Shown here: positions 13,464 to 22,156 of the stretch, piece by piece | Position numbering within the stretch: the first letter of the stretch is position 1 | Layout of the letters: each line of letters opens with the position of its first letter | Origin: Vitrella brassicaformis CCMP3155 | Taxonomy: Eukaryota > Protista > Chromerida | Assembly (NCBI GenBank): GCA_001179505.1 | Contig: CDMY01000269.1 | Span: 1-64,000 of the forward strand | DNA: 64,000 nt | Reading direction: 5' to 3' | Program-made: the position numbers and the translations under genes | Notes under the pieces: model-generated | What the model was told of the DNA's origin: nothing | Databases searched by the model: none | What the model saw: the letters and a program-made list of their open reading frames with translations, nothing else

Positions 13464-13871
13464 CTATCTGATGTCCTTGAGGTCAGGTATGACAAACTCG
13501 AGCAGCCCCTTGTTGAGCACCAGCTCCAGCAGCACGATGCCCACGAAGCCCATCATCGCCCACCGCCCGTTCAGCCGCTCAGGCCACTGGTGGAATCCCA
13601 CCTTGGGCTCGATGCTGCTGTTCGGACCGATGTCGTACTTGGTCTCGTAGAAGTCACGCGGCTGCACCGACGGCAGCCGAGTCAGTGCCGCTGCTCCTGC
13701 TCCTGCTGCTGCTGCTGCTCCTTCTCGATAATGCATGGCACTGGCAGGATGGTTGCGATGGAGCGAAGAGGGAGATCTGCTCAGCGGCGGGGCGGAAGGT
13801 GGTGGCTGGAAGGCCTCAGTGGCCGATAGGAGAGCCGCGAGGGCGACGGCAACGCATAGAAGCGCCTGCAT
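13464..13871 (-). CDS. One-helix light-harvesting-like protein (HLIP/OHP) with bipartite plastid-targeting leader, intronless
   Basis: Chlorophyll-binding motif WPERLNGRWAMMGFVGIVLLEL (ExxNGRxAM). Signal peptide MQALLCVAVALAALLSATEA followed by F (ASAFAP-like cleavage) and a Ser/Pro-rich transit peptide. Confidence 0.92.
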   Translation of the reverse strand: MQALLCVAVALAALLSATEAFQPPPSAPPLSRSPSSLHRNHPASAMHYREGAAAAAGAGAAALTRLPSVQPRDFYETKYDIGPNSSIEPKVGFHQWPERLNGRWAMMGFVGIVLLELVLNKGLLEFVIPDLKDIR

Positions 13872-13904
13872 TTCTGCCAGAGCAGCGATCGGCGGTTTCG
13901 CATC

Positions 13905-13913
13905 TGCGAGCTT
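13905..13913 (+). promoter_or_regulatory. TGCGAGCTT motif in the 160-bp divergent OHP/GlyRS promoter
   Basis: Exact 9-mer, 34 bp from the OHP ATG and 119 bp from the GlyRS ATG. Confidence 0.55.
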
Positions 13914-14031
13914 AAAGAGGCAGAGCGTGTGCAAGACGGCGTGGGGGCGGCTGTTGCCAGTGTCGAGGCGACTCAGTAGACCCATCAGTTCATCTGGCAT
14001 TTGGCCGCTGCGTCAGTGTGTTAGCGGCAGG

Positions 14032-16984
14032 ATGACGCTCGAGAACGGTCTGTCGCTCAAGGATGAGGTGCAGCGGATGCGCGCCGAGGTGGCGACGCAG
14101 GGCGAGCGGGTGCGCAAGCTCAAGAAGGACGGCGCGGTCAAGGCGGCCATCGACACGGAGGTCTCGACACTGTCCGACCTCAAGGCCAAGCTGCAGCAGA
14201 AGGAGAAGCAGCTCGAGGAGAGCACGCCGCTGTACACCCGCTGCCGCGAGCCGCTCGAGAACCTGGTCAAGCGGCGGCTGTTTGTGATCCCGGGCTTCGA
14301 GATCTATGGTGGCGTAGCGGGGCTATTTGACTTCGGTCCGCCTGGGTGTGCGCTCAAGGCTGAGGTGGAGGCGCTGTGGCGGCGGCACTTTGTGCTGCAC
14401 GAGGACATGCTTGAGGTGTCGGGCACTTGCCTGACGCCCGAGGTGGTCCTCAAGACCTCCGGCCACGTCGACCGCTTCACCGACCTGATGGTCAAGGACA
14501 CCGTCACGGGCGAGTGCTACCGGGCCGACAAGATCCTCGAGGAACAGATTGAGGCCAAGCAGAAGGCCGGCCTGCCCCCAGACGAGCACGACAGGCTGGA
14601 GAAGCTCAAGGTGCAGGCGGACGCACTCAGCAGTGAGGAAATGCACCAGGCCTTCCTGGATTTGGGCATCAAGTCGCCCGACGGCAACGGATTCTCGACG
14701 CCCTTCCCCTTCAACCTCATGTTCAAGACGTCCATCGGGCCCAAGGGGGACCTGGTGGGCTACCTGCGGCCCGAGACAGCCCAGGGCATCTTCGTCAACT
14801 TCAGGCGGCTGCTCGAGTTCAACGGAGGCAAGATGCCCTTCGCCGCCGCTCAGCTGGGTTTGGGCTTCCGCAATGAGATCGCACCGAGGTCCGGGCTGCT
14901 GCGCGTCAGAGAGTTCCAGGTGATCAGCCGCGGAGGGAGGGAGGGAAAGTGGTTAGACGGGAGCATGGCTGTTGTCTGCCTGTGTGAATGTGTGTGTGTG
15001 TGTGTGTGTTTGTGTGTGTGTGTTGTGCTTGCAGATGGGTGAGATTGAGCATTTTGTGCACCCCGACCACAAAGAGCACCCCAAGTTCGGCGCAGTCAAG
15101 GACATGAAGTTGCCCCTGTTTCCCAGAGACCGACAGCTGGGCGACGGCAAGGTAAGGTCACCCAGCCACCTTGGCAAAACAGTCAGCCCACCAGCGGGCA
15201 GCACGTGTGTGTGTGTGTGTGTGTGGTTGTAGGTTGTGATGGACATGACCCTCGAGCATGCCGTCCAGACCAAAGTCATCAACAACGAGACTCTCGCGTA
15301 GGCCATGTGCAGCCATACATCCACACAAAGAGGGAGAGATGCGTGTGTATCTGTGTGTGTGCCGTGCTTGTGCAGTTATTTCCTGGCCCGTACCTACCTG
15401 TTTCTGACCAAGTGCGGCATCCAGCACGTCGGCATGAGGTTCCGTCAGCACCTCGAGACAGAAATGGCGCACTACGCATGCGACTGCTGGGTGGCTGGGC
15501 GGACACACAGAGGGCGCAAGACCCATATAGCGGCTGGCTTCATGCCGTTGGTTTGGCTGGCTGTCTGCAGGATTGTGAGATCGAGACGTCTTACGGCTGG
15601 GTTGAGTGCGTGGGCCACGCCGACAGATCGGCATACGACCTCTCACACCACACCAAGGCAAGCAGGCTCCCCAAGCCATCTTATTGGCTGAGTGCACTGT
15701 CCGACTTGGCTGGCACTGCAGGCGAGCAAAGTCGATCTGGTGGCGCAACACAAATTCGACGCGCCCCGCGACATTGAGTACGTCAAGTTCACGCCCAACC
15801 GGCCTAAGCTGGGGCAGGCCTTCAAGCAGGACCAGGCGGCTGTCATTGAGGCACTCGAGGAGAAACCTGACCAAGAGAGACTCCACATACAGCAACAGGT
15901 GAGTGGGCAGGAGGGCAGGCAGTGGGTGACTGTGTTGACATGACTGACCTGTCTGAACCCATCACCACATCTGCAGCTGGACGCGAGCGGCACTTACGAG
16001 CTGAAGCTGTGCACGGGCCAGTCGTTCACCATCACCAAGGAAATGGCCAAATTCGAAAAGGCCGTCAAGAGAGGTCAGCGACTGAGGCATGCAGGCCGCC
16101 CCACCAAGAGGACACATCCACACATCCCTGCCTGCCTGTGTGTCTGTCTGTGGGTCTGTGTGTGTCTGTGTGTCTGTGGGTCTGTGTTGTGCTGCGTGCA
16201 GTGGCTGTGGAGGCGTACGTGCCGGCGGTTATCGAGCCGTCCTTTGGCATTGGCCGCATTATCTACTGTATCCTCGAACACACTTTCCGCTCCAGAGGCA
16301 TCCAGGTACACACACAGGGAGCCACACAGACACCCATCGGCAGACAGACAGACAGACACAACGACTGTTTGGTGGTTGGCTGTGCTGTGTGCTCATCTCT
16401 CACCCCATCCATCCATCAATGCATCCGTCAGGATCAGGAAGAGCGCTGTTTCCTGTCGCTGCCACCGGTGATAGCGCCCATCAAGTGCTCCGTGCTGCCC
16501 ATCTCCGCCAACACTCAGTTCGACGACCTCATCAACCAGCTCAAGGAACAGCTCACCTACCACGGCGTCTCGTCTCAGGTCGACAGCACGTCGGCATCCA
16601 TCGGCAGGTCGGCATTATCACCGTGAGACACACACACACACACACTCGGACACAGAAGCGGCGCCTTCCTCTGGTTGCTTTGTGCGCATCGATCATGCAG
16701 GCGCTACGCGCGCACCGACGAGCTGGGAATTCCTTTCGGCATCACTGTTGACTTCCAGTCGGTCAAGGACAGCACTGTCACACTCAGAGAGCGCGACTCG
16801 ATGAAACAAATCAGAGTCCCGGTGAGTCCGTCCACCTGCTGCAATTCCATTTGTATTGGATGGGATGGCATTGGTTGTGCAGGCGATTGAGATTCCCGAG
16901 TTGGTCCACAACATGGTGGCTGGCCGCACGACGTGGGACAAGGCGAGAGACAAGTACCCGGAGTTCATCGCACAGGAGGCATGA
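14032..16984 (+). CDS. GARS: Glycyl-tRNA synthetase (eukaryotic alpha2 type) with N-terminal WHEP domain, multi-exon
   Basis: [14 protein letters not shown]; motifs [102 protein letters not shown]; stop at 16982-16984. Confidence 0.97.
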
Positions 16985-18664
16985 CTGACTCGGTGGCTCT
17001 GATTCCGTGTAATGTAGCTGCCTGCAGCCGCCTGATAGATGCGATAGATACAAATGTCTGTCTGTCTGTGTCTGTCGATGCGTGTCACTGCATGGGTGCG
17101 CATGGCACCCATGCAGTGATGTGATTTTGTTGCCTCATTGCAATGTGTGTGTGACGTCGTTATGTAATTTTCATTTTGGTCAATCAACGAACCAATTCAA
17201 TTCACGTGTGTGTGTGTGTGTGTGCCTCTGTGTGTGACTGTTTGTTAATCTGTCTGCCTGTGTCGCTGGCTGTGCGTGTCGTGCGCTGAACGAACAATCC
17301 ATCCATCCGTCCGTCATGATCAATCAATGTGTGTGTGTGTGTGTGTACTGTGGGCCTCGACAGCCGCTGAATCCATTGCCTGCACTCGTCTGCCATGCCA
17401 ACCATGTGTGCGCGTCTGCTGCTGATGGCTGCAGCTGTGTTGTCTTCGGTGTGCGTCGGCTTATAATGATGAGAATGAGCCGCGGTGAGGACATTTCTGT
17501 GGCGGTGCGGCGACGTCTGACACTCATAAAGTATCCCAATCCCATCGACAGCCCTCGACACCTCTGACTCTCTATCCCCTGGTGAGTGAGACACACAGTC
17601 AGAGAAACATGCTTGTCATTCTCTCAATCACTCAAGTCACGTGTGTCTCTCTTGCACCGGATGTGTCTGTTGTATCTCTCCTTCGGTGTGTGGGGTTGCC
17701 TACAGAAACGAGGGCCGCCGAAGGGATTTGACCGTGTGACGCATCAACTGCAATGTGTGTATGCGCATTTGGCGGGGTGTCGATGTGTGTACACCAGCGC
17801 GCGTCTGTCACGTATACATGCGTACGTACATATTTGTTGTCATATACGTACATACTTGTTGAAGACGTGGATGACAATTCATGCGTTTCAATGAAAGGAC
17901 GCCTGAATGATTTGTTCCAATCTATGTGTTTGAATCTATGTGTTTGAATGAATCCGTCCATCCATCCACCATGCACTGGTCCGTTCAGCGGTGTCGACAT
18001 ATCCGTGTGTGTCCATACCATATGAGTGTTCCCATGCACCCACCCACCCGCCCATCCATCCGACAAGCCGTATCACGTGATGTCTTGTCATGTCTTCTCC
18101 GTGTGTGTTCTCCGTGTGTGTGTGGCTGCCCACCCGTCAGACAGTCGGCCGCTCGCCTGTTGGAGCATACAACCACATGACCGGTCGGCGGACACAAACA
18201 ACACACCCACAACACACAACACACGTGCACGAAGGCGAGCCAGCTGAAGGTAAACACTTGCCTGCCTCGCTACACGAACGCTCCCATGGGCGACGTCATT
18301 CCATCGACCCACACCCACACGTATGCAGCCGTCATCCCTGTGGGCCCATCACGTCTTTGTGGGCAAACGGACAGCACGACGGTCGATGCTGCACACGTGT
18401 ACGCATACATGTAGTATGAGACGATCGATCAGTGAAGCAGTCAGATAGGTACAGACGTACGTACGTATGTATGTGTCTTACGGGCCACGAAGCCCAAAAT
18501 AACGCCCACCAGTCACGTCAAACTCACTACGGTCCAAATTACATATCAGGGCAGCCACACACACGCTCTCACTCACTCAGTCATGCGCTCCCCCTCCCCC
18601 CCGGTGTCCCCCCATGTGTGGATGCACAACCAATCAAAGACAGGCAAGCGAGACAGTGAGTCGC

Positions 18665-19349
18665 TTAATTGCGGTTTCGGCTGGCAATGACGTTCGTCTC
18701 CAGGGTGAGGCAGTCCGCGCGTGCCTGAGCAGCGGCGGGGCTGCGGAGGTGGGCGTCAGTGGACTTGACGTCGATGCAGGCCTGCAGCTGCAGCTCGATG
18801 GCCTTGGCCTCGTCGCCGTGCTCCTCGGCCCACTTCTCGTCACACCAGTCCCACAGGCACGACTGAGATAGGGAGAAAGTGACAACACAGCACAGCACAG
18901 CACAGACACACCATGGCAACTCTGTGTGTCCCTCTGTCTGTCTATCTGTCTGCCCATGTGCTGTCCGTACGTGTGTCCAGCAGAGGACGTCGAACGGATG
19001 GCAAGACCAGCAGCAGTGCTTGTCATCATCCGGCTTGGCTGCAGTCAATCAGTCAACGGGTAACAACACGCACCCAATACATGCGTGTGTGTGTGTGTGC
19101 GGTGTGCGTACGAGTGGGGGTCGTCTTGGGCGGGGGAGTGGTCTTCTCCATGTGGCGCTTGTCGGGCAGGCAGGCAGAGAAGGAGCACTCATGCTTCCAG
19201 CACTCGTGGTCAACTGCGTGACGCATCAACCAAACCACATCAGTGCGTGTGCGCGCGTGCGCGTGTGCGGGGAAGAGGTGGTGCTTGCTTACGGATGTGG
19301 CAGTGGAGGCAGCACTTGCCGTCCCTGTCGTAAGGGTACTTGGGTCTCT

Positions 19350-19386
<37 letters not shown>

Positions 19387-19790
19387 GACAGACAGGCAGG
19401 CAGGCAGGCAGGCAGACAGGGAGCATACCACAGCACACACACACCACACACATCACATGAGACATGTCTCATGCCTTCTTCCCCTCCCTCCCTCCCTCCC
19501 TCCCCGTTCCTACTGGTCGGCTTGGGCGTCGTGGTGGGCTCCGGTGTGGTCGTCTCGTTGTCACCGTCAGTGCCGTCAGTGCCGTCAGCGCCGTCAGCGC
19601 CGTCAGCGCCGTCAGCGCCGTCAGCGCCGTCAGCGCCGTCAGCGCCGTCAGCGCCGTCAGTCCCGTCAGCGCCGTCAGTGCCGTCAGTGCCGTCAACTGG
19701 CTCGGGTTCATTCTGGAGCCGACGTGGCACTTCCTGTGCCGCCGCCAAGGCGAGCAGGCCGATAAGGGCAAGAGCGAAGAGGGTCCTCAT
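18665..19790 (-). CDS. Secreted Cys-rich protein, paralogue A: signal peptide, (G-A/T-D)n collagen-like repeat, two CCxxCHxxDxxCW modules, helical C-terminus; 5 exons
   Basis: MRTLFALALIGLLALAAAQ signal. Frame-consistent GT-AG exons give KCCLHCHILDHECWKHECSFSAC and HCCWSCHPFDVLCWTHSCLWDWC. The same exon structure is seen in paralogue B. Confidence 0.8.
19564..19695 (-). repeat. Coding 9-bp tandem repeat (about 14 units) encoding DGT/DGA
   Basis: Plus-strand unit CCGTCAGYG repeated; translates on the minus strand as DGTDGTDGADGTDGADGA... Confidence 0.95.
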
Positions 19791-20907
19791 CGTGGTGACG
19801 ATGCTGGCGGGGGAGCGAAACGACTGGGAAAGGGGAAGGGGACGAGAAACTAAGGAAGAGAGACAAAGGAAAAGAGAATGGATCACGAGAACCGAATGTG
19901 TACGCACGCTGTAGCCAATCCGCAACGGCCGGCCGTTACGGCGCCGTTAGCGGCGGTGCGAGCTTCTTCAATCTGAGCCCGCAAAGAATGCCTAGGTGGC
20001 TGCTGTTGTCTGCTGTGATAATGGTGGTTGAAATGTTCACTGATTACCAGAGATCGAGTCGTCAAAACAACAGTTGATTGATCGGTAACATGATTGGTAT
20101 GCGAACCAAAGCAAACAGTCTCCGCGCGTGTCCATATGAGTGTTCTCATGCATCCATCCATCCATCGCTCGACAGCACGTGACTTCTGTGGTTTGTGTGG
20201 CTATCGGCCCGTCAGTCAGTCGGTCGCTCGCGTGTTGGGAGCACCCAACCGACGACCGGCCGACAGACACAAACAAACAAACAAAACAAAACAAAAACAA
20301 ACAAGACACACAAGACACACGACGACACACAAAACAACCACACACAGCACACGTGCATGAAGGCGACCCAGCGCAAGAAAAACCTGCCTCACTCATCCGA
20401 AGGCTTTCATGGATGACACGACGTCCACCGACCCTCAATGACCCACCCACGCAAAAACAGGCAGACACGCACTCACACCCACACCCTTACCCACACGTAT
20501 GCAGCCGTCATCTCTGTGGGCCCATCCTGTCTTTGTGGGCAAACGGACAGCACGACGGTTGACGTACGTGTATATATACATGGAGTATGAGACGAATGGA
20601 CGAATAGACCAATGGACCAACGAACGATCGAGCAGAAAGCAATCGATATCAGGAACGCGCGTGTGTACGTATGCCATGTGCCCTGAAGCCGAAAAGAAAC
20701 CCCACACCCGATATGTACACCACTGCACATTGCAAATTACATATCAGGGCAGCCACACACGCACACGCACACACACAGACACACGCTCTCACTCACGTAG
20801 ACAGATGGTGAATGAAGGAACGAATGGACGAACAACCGGCCTCCCCCCTCCCCGCCTCCCATGTGTCGATACACAATCAAAGACAGGCAAGCAAGACAGG
20901 CAGTTGA

Positions 20908-22156
20908 TTAGTTGAGGTTGGCCTGTCGGCTGGCGATGATGTTGTTCTCCAGGGTGAGGCACCGCTCGCGTGCCTCGGCAGCGGAGGGGCTGCGGAGGTG
21001 GGCTTCAGTGAGCTTGAGGTCGGTGCAGGCCTGCAGCTGAAGCTCGATGGCCTTGATTTGGTCGGCGTTCTGCTCAGCCCACTTGTCGTCACACCAGTCC
21101 CAACCGCACGACTGAGACAATGCCGCATAACACAACACAGCACAGCACAGCACAGACACAGCATGGCAACTCAGTCTGGTCTCTGCCCATGTGCTGTCCG
21201 TACGTGTGTCCAGCAGAAGAGATCAAATGCATGGCAGTCCCAGCAGCAGTTCTTGTCATCATCCGGCTTGGCTGCAGTCAGTCGGTCAGTCAGTCAGTCA
21301 AGAGGCAACAACAAGTTGGGATCAATCGCCTCCGTGTGTGTGCGGTGTGCGTACGAGTGGGGGGCGGGGGAGTGGTCTTCTCAACGTGGCGCTTGTCGGG
21401 CAGGCAGGCACTGAAAGAGCATTCGTACTTCCAGCACTCGTGGTCGACTGCAATATCAACCACACAAAAGGCGCACACAGAGGGAGGCATCAGTGTGTGT
21501 ATGTAGGTGTGCGTGTGCGTGTGCGTGTGTGCGAGGGGGAGGTGGTGCTTGCTTACGGATGTGGCAGTGGAGGCAGCACTTGCCGTCCTTGTCGTGAGGG
21601 TACTTTGGTCTCTCTGCACACACACACACACANNNNNNNNNNNNNNNNNNNNNNNNNNNNNNNNNNNNNNNNNNNNNNNNNNNNNNNNNNNNNNNNNNNN
21701 NNNNNNNNNNNNNNNNNNNNNNNNNNNNNNNNNNNNNNNNNNNNNNNNNNNNNNNNNNNNNNNNNNNNNNNNNNNNNNNNNNNNNNNNNNNNNNNNNNNN
21801 NNNNNNNNNNNNNNNNNNNNNNNNNNNNNNNNNNNNNNNNNNNNNNNNNNNNNNNNNNNNNNNNNNNNNNNNNNNNNNNNNNNNNNNNNNNNNNNNNNNN
21901 NNNNNNNNNNNNNNNNNNNNNNNNNNNNNNNNTCCCTCCCTCCCTCCCCGCTCCTACTGGTCGGCTTGGGCGTCGGTGTGGTGGTGGGCGGGGGCGTGGT
22001 GGTGGTGGGCGGGGGCGTGGTGGTGGTGGGCGGGGGCGTCGTGGTGGTGGGCGGGGGCGTCGGGCAGTCGTGGGGCGGGCATCTCCTCTGAGGCAGCTCC
22101 TGTGCCGCCGCCAAGGCGAGCAGGCCGATAAGGGCAAGGGCGAAGAGGGTCCTCAT
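20908..22156 (-). CDS. Secreted Cys-rich protein, paralogue B: signal peptide, (PPPTTTT)n mucin-like linker, two CCxxCHxxDxxCW modules; gap inside intron 1
   Basis: Identical signal MRTLFALALIGLLALAAAQ; modules KCCLHCHILDHECWKYECSFSAC and NCCWDCHAFDLFCWTHSCGWDWC; C-terminus KWAEQNADQIKAIELQLQAC...RQANLN*. Confidence 0.8.
21978..22061 (-). repeat. Coding 21-bp tandem repeat (about 4 units) encoding PPPTTTT
   Basis: Plus-strand unit GTGGTGGTGGGCGGGGGCGTG/C repeated. Confidence 0.9.

What the first reader, a model, noticed from the sequence alone, without database searches (positions are those of the whole stretch)
18665..22156. Tandem secreted paralogues with a doubled, unrecognised Cys/His module and exchanged collagen-like versus mucin-like linkers
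Seen in sequence: both genes encode the same signal peptide and two modules with identical spacing C-C-x2-C-H-x2-D-x2-C-W-x3-C-x4-C, giving four copies in total. In the same position of exon 1, copy A has about 14 Gly-X-Y-type triplets (G-A/T-D) while copy B has (PPPTTTT)x4 preceded by CPPHDC. Inference: a modular extracellular family (cell or cyst wall, adhesion) in which the stalk is swappable while the Cys module is conserved. I cannot assign the module to a known domain. Each module contains CxxCH, but disulfide or metal binding is more plausible in the secretory pathway.
Basis: partly seen in the sequence, partly recalled or inferred. Interest (0 to 1): 0.75.

Follow-up and report, generated by a model that had tools for sequence, protein, structure and literature searches.

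The report
Vitrella-only secreted six-cysteine module proteins
Two neighbouring genes of the coral-associated alga Vitrella brassicaformis encode secreted proteins built from a shared leader, a fast-changing repetitive stalk and a small cysteine/tryptophan-rich module that has no detectable relative outside this species; they are real and spliced as read, but what they do is still unknown.

Summary
Observation confirmed. The N gap lies wholly inside intron 1 of B and does not touch the frame. Splicing of A is confirmed by a transcript-derived Vitrella protein (A0A7S1KBC3); B equals the annotated CEL98368.1. The family has seven loci in this 72.7-Mb genome and no relative among 1.84 billion protein representatives, Pfam, PDB sequences or folds. 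The His of CxxCH is replaced in 3 of 11 modules, so haem or His ligation is unlikely. The 'collagen-like' tract is an unstable 9-nt repeat (14.7 copies here, about 3 in the transcript, 4.6 in a paralogue) without proline. Stalk type does not follow core relatedness, which supports stalk exchange. Most likely these are soluble, disulfide-knotted extracellular matrix or wall proteins; function is untested. The scan earlier noted other Vitrella-only secreted Cys-rich families on other DNA of this genome, not this one.

The parts
18665..19790 (-). Gene A (5 exons: 19790-19514, 19349-19293, 19213-19112, 19038-18971, 18862-18665), 233 aa
   Evidence: GT-AG at all junctions. Exons 2-5 are identical to transcript-derived P0001 = A0A7S1KBC3.
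19734..19790 (-). Signal peptide of A (about 19 codons; basic start, hydrophobic core, AAA-Q site)
   Evidence: Highest 15-residue hydropathy 2.7 at residue 4 and no other hydrophobic stretch. 92-100% identical leader in B, C520 and C218.
19564..19695 (-). Acidic stalk of A: 9-nt minisatellite x14.7 encoding (D-G-A/T)n
   Evidence: TRF finds 95% matches. Pfam Collagen 34.1 bits against a cut-off of 27.2. Only about 3 units in P0001 and 4.6 units in the C520 paralogue.
19170..19314 (-). Module 1 of A (19314-19293 + 19213-19170, split by intron 2)
18842..19015 (-). Module 2 of A (19015-18971 + 18862-18842, split by intron 4)
   Evidence: AlphaFold2 pLDDT about 80 together with the tail.
18668..18841 (-). 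Conserved tail of A: two long helices with one conserved Cys in each
   Evidence: Invariant C164 and C186 in alignment A5. Helices 151-173 and 177-198.
20908..22156 (-). Gene B (5 exons: 22156-21958, 21613-21557, 21447-21355, 21271-21204, 21111-20908), 206 aa
   Evidence: Identical to P0008 = CEL98368.1 / A0A0G4ELR2.
21978..22060 (-). T/P-rich stalk of B: 21-nt repeat x4 encoding PPPTTTT
   Evidence: TRF finds 98% matches. Sub-threshold New_glue hit.
22064..22081 (-). C-x4-C pair (C-PPHD-C) ahead of the B stalk
   Evidence: A similar C-x4-C-P-T lead-in occurs in P0003.
21633..21932 (.). Assembly gap inside intron 1 of B
   Evidence: It lies 19 nt from the acceptor and 25 nt from the donor. It is flanked by (CA)n and (CCCT)n, as in the 164-nt intron 1 of A.
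21404..21578 (-). Module 1 of B (21578-21557 + 21447-21404)
21091..21248 (-). Module 2 of B (21248-21204 + 21111-21091)
20911..21090 (-). Conserved helical tail of B
18116..18664 (-). 3' flank of A, duplicated with the gene (matches 20191-20595 downstream of B)
   Evidence: Self-BLAST gives 80-86% identity.

Best explanation
A and B are a tandem duplicate pair (dS about 0.24) of a seven-gene family found only in Vitrella brassicaformis. Each encodes a soluble, acidic, secreted protein. The parts are a cleavable signal peptide, a low-complexity stalk coded by a coding minisatellite (acidic (DGx)n in A, probably O-glycosylated PPPTTTT in B), two 22-residue six-Cys/Trp modules, and a two-helix tail carrying one more Cys pair. 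In the oxidising secretory pathway each module most likely forms three disulfides and the tail one. The conserved aromatic residues (W, F, W, W) and one Asp then pack or present a binding face. Module 2 plus the tail is the folded core, and the stalk holds it away from the cell. I infer that the proteins sit in the extracellular matrix or cell wall and bind or cross-link a wall polymer or partner protein. Shown: gene structure, splicing of A, family size, restriction to Vitrella, non-conservation of the His, stalk instability and mosaicism. Inferred: disulfide bonding, glycosylation, location and binding role.
For: Gene models and splicing.
Secretion: one N-terminal hydrophobic segment, no other hydrophobic stretch, hydrophilic C-terminus.
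Disulfides: even Cys counts in every member (10, 14, 14, 16, 20).
Selection: purifying on the modules (dN/dS 0.2-0.4 against 0.78 in the tail).
Conservation: the invariant non-Cys residues are W, F, D and W.
Fold: AlphaFold2 models residues 120-200 of A at pLDDT about 80 as a helical unit.
Family: seven loci.
Expression: transcript-derived records for A (P0001) and a C8-type paralogue (P0007, MMETSP), and an intronless 1,941-nt JGI contig for the C130b paralogue (P0006).
Stalks: T/P-rich in four members.
Glycosylation capacity: the genome has Glyco_transf_7C-type glycosyltransferase loci, which is weak support.
Against: There is no experimental localisation and no homology to any wall, lectin or adhesion domain. 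The AlphaFold2 model rests on a 7-sequence alignment, module 1 is modelled below pLDDT 50, and no coordinates were available to check Cys pairing. Expression of B is supported only by the genome annotation. Small secreted Cys-rich proteins serve many other roles.
Confidence: 0.55

Rival explanations
1. They are precursors of secreted bioactive peptides for defence, signalling or toxin-like action. A conserved leader is combined with diversifying mature parts, as in conotoxin superfamilies.
For: The leader (5'UTR plus signal peptide plus the E-V-P-R..R-R-L-Q stretch) is shared at 88-95% DNA identity with a gene of quite different mature sequence at C218. A dibasic RR follows the leader in all members. 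The Cys framework CC-C-C-C-C equals conotoxin framework IV (own knowledge). Tail dN/dS is 0.78. Earlier scan notes describe other Vitrella families of that style.
Against: The mature proteins are 130-290 residues with long stalks, not short peptides. They are acidic (net -3 to -20), unlike most antimicrobial peptides. The modules are the conserved part, not the variable part. No processing site separates the modules from the tail.
Confidence: 0.18
2. They are Ca2+-binding acidic matrix proteins. The Asp-rich (DGx)n stalk and the D-x-D-G-K lead-in before each module would bind calcium, possibly relevant to life on coral skeleton.
For: Net charge is -10 to -20 in most members. An acidic lead-in precedes every module. 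The same leader is used by a gene with a run of about 40 Asp.
Against: B has net charge of only -3 and no acidic stalk. There is no hit to EF-hand, TSP3, LDLa or any Ca-binding family. Vitrella is not known to calcify (own knowledge).
Confidence: 0.1
3. They are haem- or metal-binding proteins using the four CxxCH motifs.
For: CxxCH occurs in all four modules of A and B, and the proteins are rich in His, Cys and Asp.
Against: The His is R and P in the two C520 modules and L in C8, and Q in the variant module of P0004. There is no cytochrome c or metallothionein hit. Cys counts are even. The region after the leader is acidic, unlike a plastid transit peptide.
Confidence: 0.07
4. Copy A carries a true collagen-like triple helix that trimerises the protein.
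For: Pfam Collagen PF01391 scores E 2.3e-8, 34.1 bits against a cut-off of 27.2, on residues 34-77 of exon 1. There are 14-15 uninterrupted G-X-Y triplets.
Against: The tract has no Pro, every Y is Asp (about -15 charge) and no basic partners exist. Only about 3 triplets occur in the transcript-derived protein and 4.6 in the C520 paralogue, so length is not conserved. The tract is a 95%-pure 9-nt minisatellite.
Confidence: 0.05

Closest known systems
PSI domain (plexin/semaphorin/integrin), the name UniProt gives to paralogue A0A0G4EBD2 (P0004)
   Same: A small extracellular Cys-rich knot. It shares a local C-x2-C-x6-C-W stretch.
   Different: PSI has eight Cys and a C-x-W-C motif (own knowledge), whereas this module has six Cys starting with a CC doublet and has C-W-x3-C. 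Pfam PSI models are not hit even at E<=10. No PSI-bearing chain appears in PDB profile searches or fold searches.
Small disulfide-rich carbohydrate-binding modules joined by Thr/Pro linkers (fungal CBM1, hevein/CBM18)
   Same: It works like them in layout: a 20-40-residue disulfide-stabilised module with conserved aromatic residues, attached through a T/P-rich, probably O-glycosylated linker, in a secreted protein.
   Different: There is no sequence or fold match, the Cys pattern differs, and no catalytic partner domain is present. Carbohydrate binding is untested.
Conotoxin-type gene superfamilies (framework IV, CC-C-C-C-C)
   Same: The order of Cys residues is the same. The leader is conserved and shared between genes with different mature parts.
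   Different: Here the Cys modules are the conserved part. The proteins are long, acidic and carry stalks. There is no homology.
Hydroxyproline-rich or mucin-like wall glycoproteins of algae (pherophorins, extensin-like proteins)
   Same: They also have a signal peptide, a Pro/Thr-rich repetitive stalk of variable length and a globular end domain, and they form small lineage-specific families.
   Different: There is no pherophorin or extensin domain hit, and the globular part is a new Cys/Trp module plus a helical hairpin.
Other Vitrella-only secreted Cys-rich families noted earlier by this scan (s1-201706, s1-212074, s1-215922)
   Same: They come from the same genome, are secreted, spliced and six-Cys, and have no relatives outside the species. 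The extra C-terminal module of P0004 has the CC-x2-C-x8-C framework reported for s1-201706.
   Different: The loci and spacing differ (x6 against x8), and this family has two modules plus a helical tail. A search of the genome with the P0004 variant module found only itself, so no sequence link is shown.

Membership tests
Collagen triple helix repeat (PF01391) | Uninterrupted Gly-X-Y periodicity scoring above the Pfam cut-off | tested here: met
   34.1 bits against 27.2, E 2.3e-8; 14.7 triplets.
Collagen triple helix repeat (PF01391) | Imino acids or charge pairs in X/Y that stabilise a triple helix | tested here: not met
   X is Ala or Thr and Y is always Asp. The tract has no Pro, Lys or Arg.
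Collagen triple helix repeat (PF01391) | Tract length conserved among orthologues and paralogues | tested here: not met
   About 3 triplets in transcript-derived P0001, 4.6 in C520 and none in B.
PSI domain (PF01437 / SMART PSI) | Profile match | tested here: not met
   No PSI family at E<=10 for P0001-P0004, P0006 and P0007 or for the unsplit module pieces.
PSI domain (PF01437 / SMART PSI) | Eight Cys including a C-x-W-C motif | tested here: not met
   The module has six Cys, a CC doublet and C-W-x3-C.
c-type cytochrome haem attachment (CxxCH) | His of CxxCH invariant as the axial ligand | tested here: not met
   R and P in C520, L in C8, Q in the P0004 variant module.
Mucin-like / HRGP-type stalk | Tandem Thr/Pro-rich repeats after a signal peptide | tested here: met
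   PPPTTTT x4 in B. T/P-rich stalks in P0002, P0003 and P0007, with sub-threshold Mucin and New_glue hits.
Mucin-like / HRGP-type stalk | O-glycosylation of the repeats | not testable with these tools
   Only two Glyco_transf_7C-type loci in the genome, which is not specific.
Classical secreted protein | N-terminal signal peptide, with no transmembrane segment and no hydrophobic GPI-type C-terminus | tested here: met
   Hydropathy is 2.1-2.7 at residues 3-4 and at most 1.2 elsewhere. The last 12 residues are hydrophilic. No SignalP run was available.
New Vitrella CC-W module family (defined here) | CC-x2-C-x6-CW-x3-C-x4-C with invariant Asp at position 9, after an acidic D-x-D-G-K lead-in | tested here: met
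   All four modules of A and B and all modules of the paralogues. Profile hits fall only in Vitrella.

The most novel reading that the evidence does not exclude
The 22-residue CC-W module plus its disulfide-linked helical hairpin is a new extracellular fold invented in the Vitrella lineage. It would act as a wall-polymer- or calcium-binding unit. The family would evolve by shuffling a shared leader/stalk exon between genes (including a poly-Asp protein gene), a conotoxin-like way of building secreted proteins in an alga next to the apicomplexan parasites.
Probability: 0.3. Interest if true: 0.55.

Novelty: new variant of a known kind. Interest (0 to 1): 0.38.

Why it matters
Chromerids are the closest photosynthetic relatives of apicomplexan parasites, whose extracellular Cys-rich modular proteins drive adhesion and wall building. 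This family shows that Vitrella builds its own secreted repertoire from a domain absent from Pfam, the PDB and 1.84 billion clustered proteins. It gives a compact target of about 80 residues for structure determination. It also offers a clean natural example of coding minisatellites and leader-exon sharing remodelling the stalk of a secreted protein while the binding core is kept. In practical terms, gene A appears to be missing from the public genome annotation, and the 'PSI domain' label on a paralogue is not reproducible.

Tried and rejected
**Searches that found nothing useful**
- Pfam on every exon piece, on unsplit modules from paralogues and on full-length database proteins gave only Collagen (A stalk) and sub-threshold Mucin or New_glue hits.
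- PHROGs gave nothing.
- PDB sequence profiles (A5, A4) gave only low-complexity or chance rows at E>0.3.
- The ESM Atlas gave no usable feature hit, and structure rows had TM<0.5.
- For the whole model, VIA-align gave a best Z of 5.2, all generic helical hairpins, and Foldseek gave nothing.
- For the module alone (35 residues, pLDDT 72), there was no match with Z>=2 and no Foldseek match.
- The metagenome scan gave 158 pattern matches, none confirmed.
- A genome search with the P0004 variant module, meant to link this family to the CC-x2-C-x8-C family noted earlier, found only itself.

**Readings rejected:** haem attachment, PSI membership, a collagen triple helix and plastid targeting (reasons above).

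- Alignment A3 misplaced the exon-5 rows and was replaced by A4.
Exons were searched by reference, and full-length sequences were used only as returned by the databases.
Full report
**What the DNA is.** The window is contig C269 of a 72,700,666-base assembly in 1,064 contigs. These are exactly the figures published for Vitrella brassicaformis CCMP3155 (PMC4501334). Every database protein matching the locus is from that species. It is a spliced eukaryotic genome, so bacterial ORF lists only show fragments.

**Gene models.** I placed the exons by reading the minus strand, checked splice sites and phases, and mapped copy A onto copy B by local alignment.
- A: 19790-19514, 19349-19293, 19213-19112, 19038-18971, 18862-18665 (702 nt, 233 codons plus stop).
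- B: 22156-21958, 21613-21557, 21447-21355, 21271-21204, 21111-20908 (621 nt, 206 codons plus stop).
- All eight introns are GT-AG, and intron phases (1, 1, 1, 0) are the same in both copies.
Exons were searched by reference.
- The exhaustive profile search then returned full-length public proteins, which serve as an independent check.
- Each in-frame exon translation of A occurs in order in P0001, and each of B in P0008, with exactly one residue between pieces at the three split codons.
- P0008 is CEL98368.1 / A0A0G4ELR2, the annotated product of this contig.
- P0001 is UniRef A0A7S1KBC3, which is listed with no contig.
- P0001 equals A everywhere except the number of stalk repeats. It therefore does not derive from this assembly. 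I take it to be a transcriptome product (own knowledge of that accession range).
- For B only the genome annotation supports the model.

**The gap.**
- N 21633-21932 sits inside intron 1 of B. Nineteen intron bases ((CA)n plus CAG) separate it from exon 2, and 25 bases (GTAGGAGC then (GGGA)n, read on the minus strand) separate it from exon 1.
- The ungapped intron 1 of A is 164 nt of (CA)n, (CAGG)n and (CCCT)n. That explains why assembly broke here.
- The transcript-derived P0001 joins exons 1 and 2 directly.
- The coding frame of B therefore does not depend on the gap.
- All ten gaps in the window are exactly 300 N, so the true length is unknown. It is probably about 120 nt if B resembles A.

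**Anatomy of the proteins.**
- Both proteins start with the same 20 residues: a basic start, a hydrophobic core and a small-residue cleavage site.
- No other hydrophobic segment exists and the C-termini are hydrophilic. The products are therefore soluble and secreted.
- The stalk follows (described below).
Each is preceded by an acidic D-x-D-G-K-like lead-in. A short T/P spacer separates them.
- AlphaFold2 on the seven-sequence family alignment models residues 120-200 at pLDDT 78-84. The model has a short helix inside module 2 and two long helices (151-173, 177-198). Module 1 and the stalk fall below 50.
- The folded core is thus module 2 plus a helical hairpin, not the 22-residue module alone.

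**The family.**
- Six-frame searches of the genome with exon 5, with an unsplit module from a paralogue and with profile A4 find the same seven loci. These are C269 (A, B), C130 (two genes, P0004 and P0002), C520, C8 (P0003) and C419.
- Intron positions inside the modules differ between members: unsplit in C130a and in C520 module 2, and split at three different points elsewhere.
- Module-1 sequences of different genes resemble each other more than they resemble module 2 of the same gene. The internal duplication therefore predates the family.
- The single-module genes C8 and C419 combine a module-1-type lead-in with a module-2-type body. This looks like unequal recombination between the two modules.
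- Invariant non-Cys positions are Asp9 and Trp13, with W/F/L at positions 3, 8 and 19.
- The His of CxxCH is not conserved. It is R and P in C520 and L in C8, and Q in the extra C-terminal variant module of P0004.
- Cys counts are even in every member.

**No relatives elsewhere.**

| Search | Result |
|---|---|
| Profile A4 (59 positions) against 1.84 billion representatives | Four proteins at E<=0.001, all Vitrella |
| Word-indexed search with P0001 | Only P0001, P0008 and P0002 |
| Metagenome scan | Nothing |
| Pfam | No hit on modules or tail, even at E<=10 |
| PDB sequence profiles | Only chance rows |
| Fold searches | Generic helical hairpins at Z<=5.2; nothing for the module alone |
| ESM Atlas | Nothing |

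UniProt calls paralogue P0004 a 'PSI domain-containing protein'. I could not reproduce that label, and the defining PSI features are absent.

**The stalks and their 'exchange'.**
- A's stalk is a 9-nt minisatellite, 14.7 copies at 95% match, giving (D-G-A/T)n. It passes the Pfam Collagen cut-off.
- It has no Pro, and every Y position is Asp.
- The transcript-derived protein has only about three units. This is either a strain polymorphism or an assembly collapse; I cannot tell which.
- B's stalk is a 21-nt repeat x4 at 98% match, giving PPPTTTT, after a C-x4-C pair.
- Right after its acidic repeat A still carries a short T/P stretch like the other members.
- The C520 paralogue has the same leader, the same following stretch and a (DGT)4.6 plus (DGDNG)3.7 acidic stalk. 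It shows 84% DNA identity to A over 180 nt.
- In the core, however, A is closest to B (69-75% identity) and only 41-50% identical to C520.
- Stalk type therefore does not follow core relatedness. Either exon 1 has been exchanged or converted between paralogues, or an ancestral composite stalk was lost differentially.
- The leader with about 100 nt of 5' flank of B is 88% identical to that of a gene at C218. That gene encodes a Pro-rich region and a run of about 40 Asp, with no Cys module within 8 kb.

**Selection (A against B, Nei-Gojobori).**

| Region | dN/dS |
|---|---|
| Exons 2-5 overall (dS 0.24) | 0.50 |
| Signal peptide | 0.12 |
| Module exons | 0.2-0.4 |
| Tail exon | 0.78 |

- Introns are 78-93% identical where alignable, with many indels.
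- Counts are small (135 codons), so these ratios are indicative only.
- The duplicated unit runs from about 550 nt 3' of the stop to about 18 nt 5' of the ATG. The two copies therefore have unrelated promoters.

**How it most likely works.**
- Shown: the products are secreted, soluble and mostly acidic. They carry a conserved Cys/aromatic core behind a hypervariable spacer.
- Inferred: three disulfides per module and one in the tail; O-glycosylation of the T/P stalks; residence in the wall or extracellular matrix; and binding or cross-linking through the aromatic-rich modules. In layout this resembles small carbohydrate-binding modules on T/P linkers.
- Rivals, with my odds, are released bioactive peptides (0.18), calcium-binding acidic matrix proteins (0.10), haem or metal binding (0.07) and a true collagen helix in A (0.05).

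**Novelty and score.** Both genes are in public databases as uncharacterised proteins, and nothing about them turned up in three literature searches. The module is a new small domain, while the kind of protein is familiar: a secreted, modular, Cys-rich protein with a repetitive stalk in a lineage-specific family. Earlier notes of this scan describe other Vitrella-only secreted Cys-rich families elsewhere in the genome, but none at this place or with this sequence. I rate it as a new variant of a known kind, with interest 0.38.

Noticed in passing
L035:1870-2335 (G000:C218:153869-154334, + strand): This gene has the same leader and about 100 nt of 5' flank as B (88% DNA identity). It encodes a Pro-rich (PPAVE)n region and a run of about 40 Asp, with no Cys module within 8 kb downstream. 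It looks like a secreted poly-Asp protein sharing the leader exon.
   Followed up: partly
window 18665-19790: Gene A has no genome-annotation protein in the searched collections, only the transcript-derived A0A7S1KBC3, whereas B has CEL98368.1. A seems to be unannotated in the public Vitrella gene set.
   Followed up: partly
P0004 residues 130-153 (L010:1946-2035:+): Paralogue C130a ends in an extra variant module, CC-x2-C-x8-C-x3-C-x5-C. This framework resembles the one reported for another Vitrella family (s1-201706). A genome search with it found only itself.
   Followed up: partly
P0002 N-terminus (G000:C130, about 33.9 kb): The annotated protein starts with two signal-peptide-like segments in tandem. 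This is either a partial duplication of the leader or a mis-modelled first exon.
   Followed up: no
L004 (G000:C8, a contig of only 4,627 bases) and L003 (G000:C419:73723-76827): These two single-module genes are 26/27 and 12/13 identical in the compared blocks. C8 may be an unplaced allelic copy of C419. They differ at the CxxC-H/L position.
   Followed up: no
P0006 (JGI/IMG, 334 aa on a 1,941-nt contig): This is an intronless contig encoding the whole C130b protein plus a read-through of its 5'UTR, so it is RNA-derived.
   Followed up: no
window 13735-15039 (+): This long open frame has a WHEP-TRS domain (E 3.9e-11) and the start of a class II aminoacyl-tRNA synthetase core. It is an unrelated housekeeping neighbour.
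   Followed up: no
window: ten gaps, each exactly 300 N (11780, 21633, 23451, 25706, 32105, 32911, 51196, 55077, 58583, 60684): The uniform gap length shows these are placeholders. The gap studied here falls in intronic microsatellite.
   Followed up: partly
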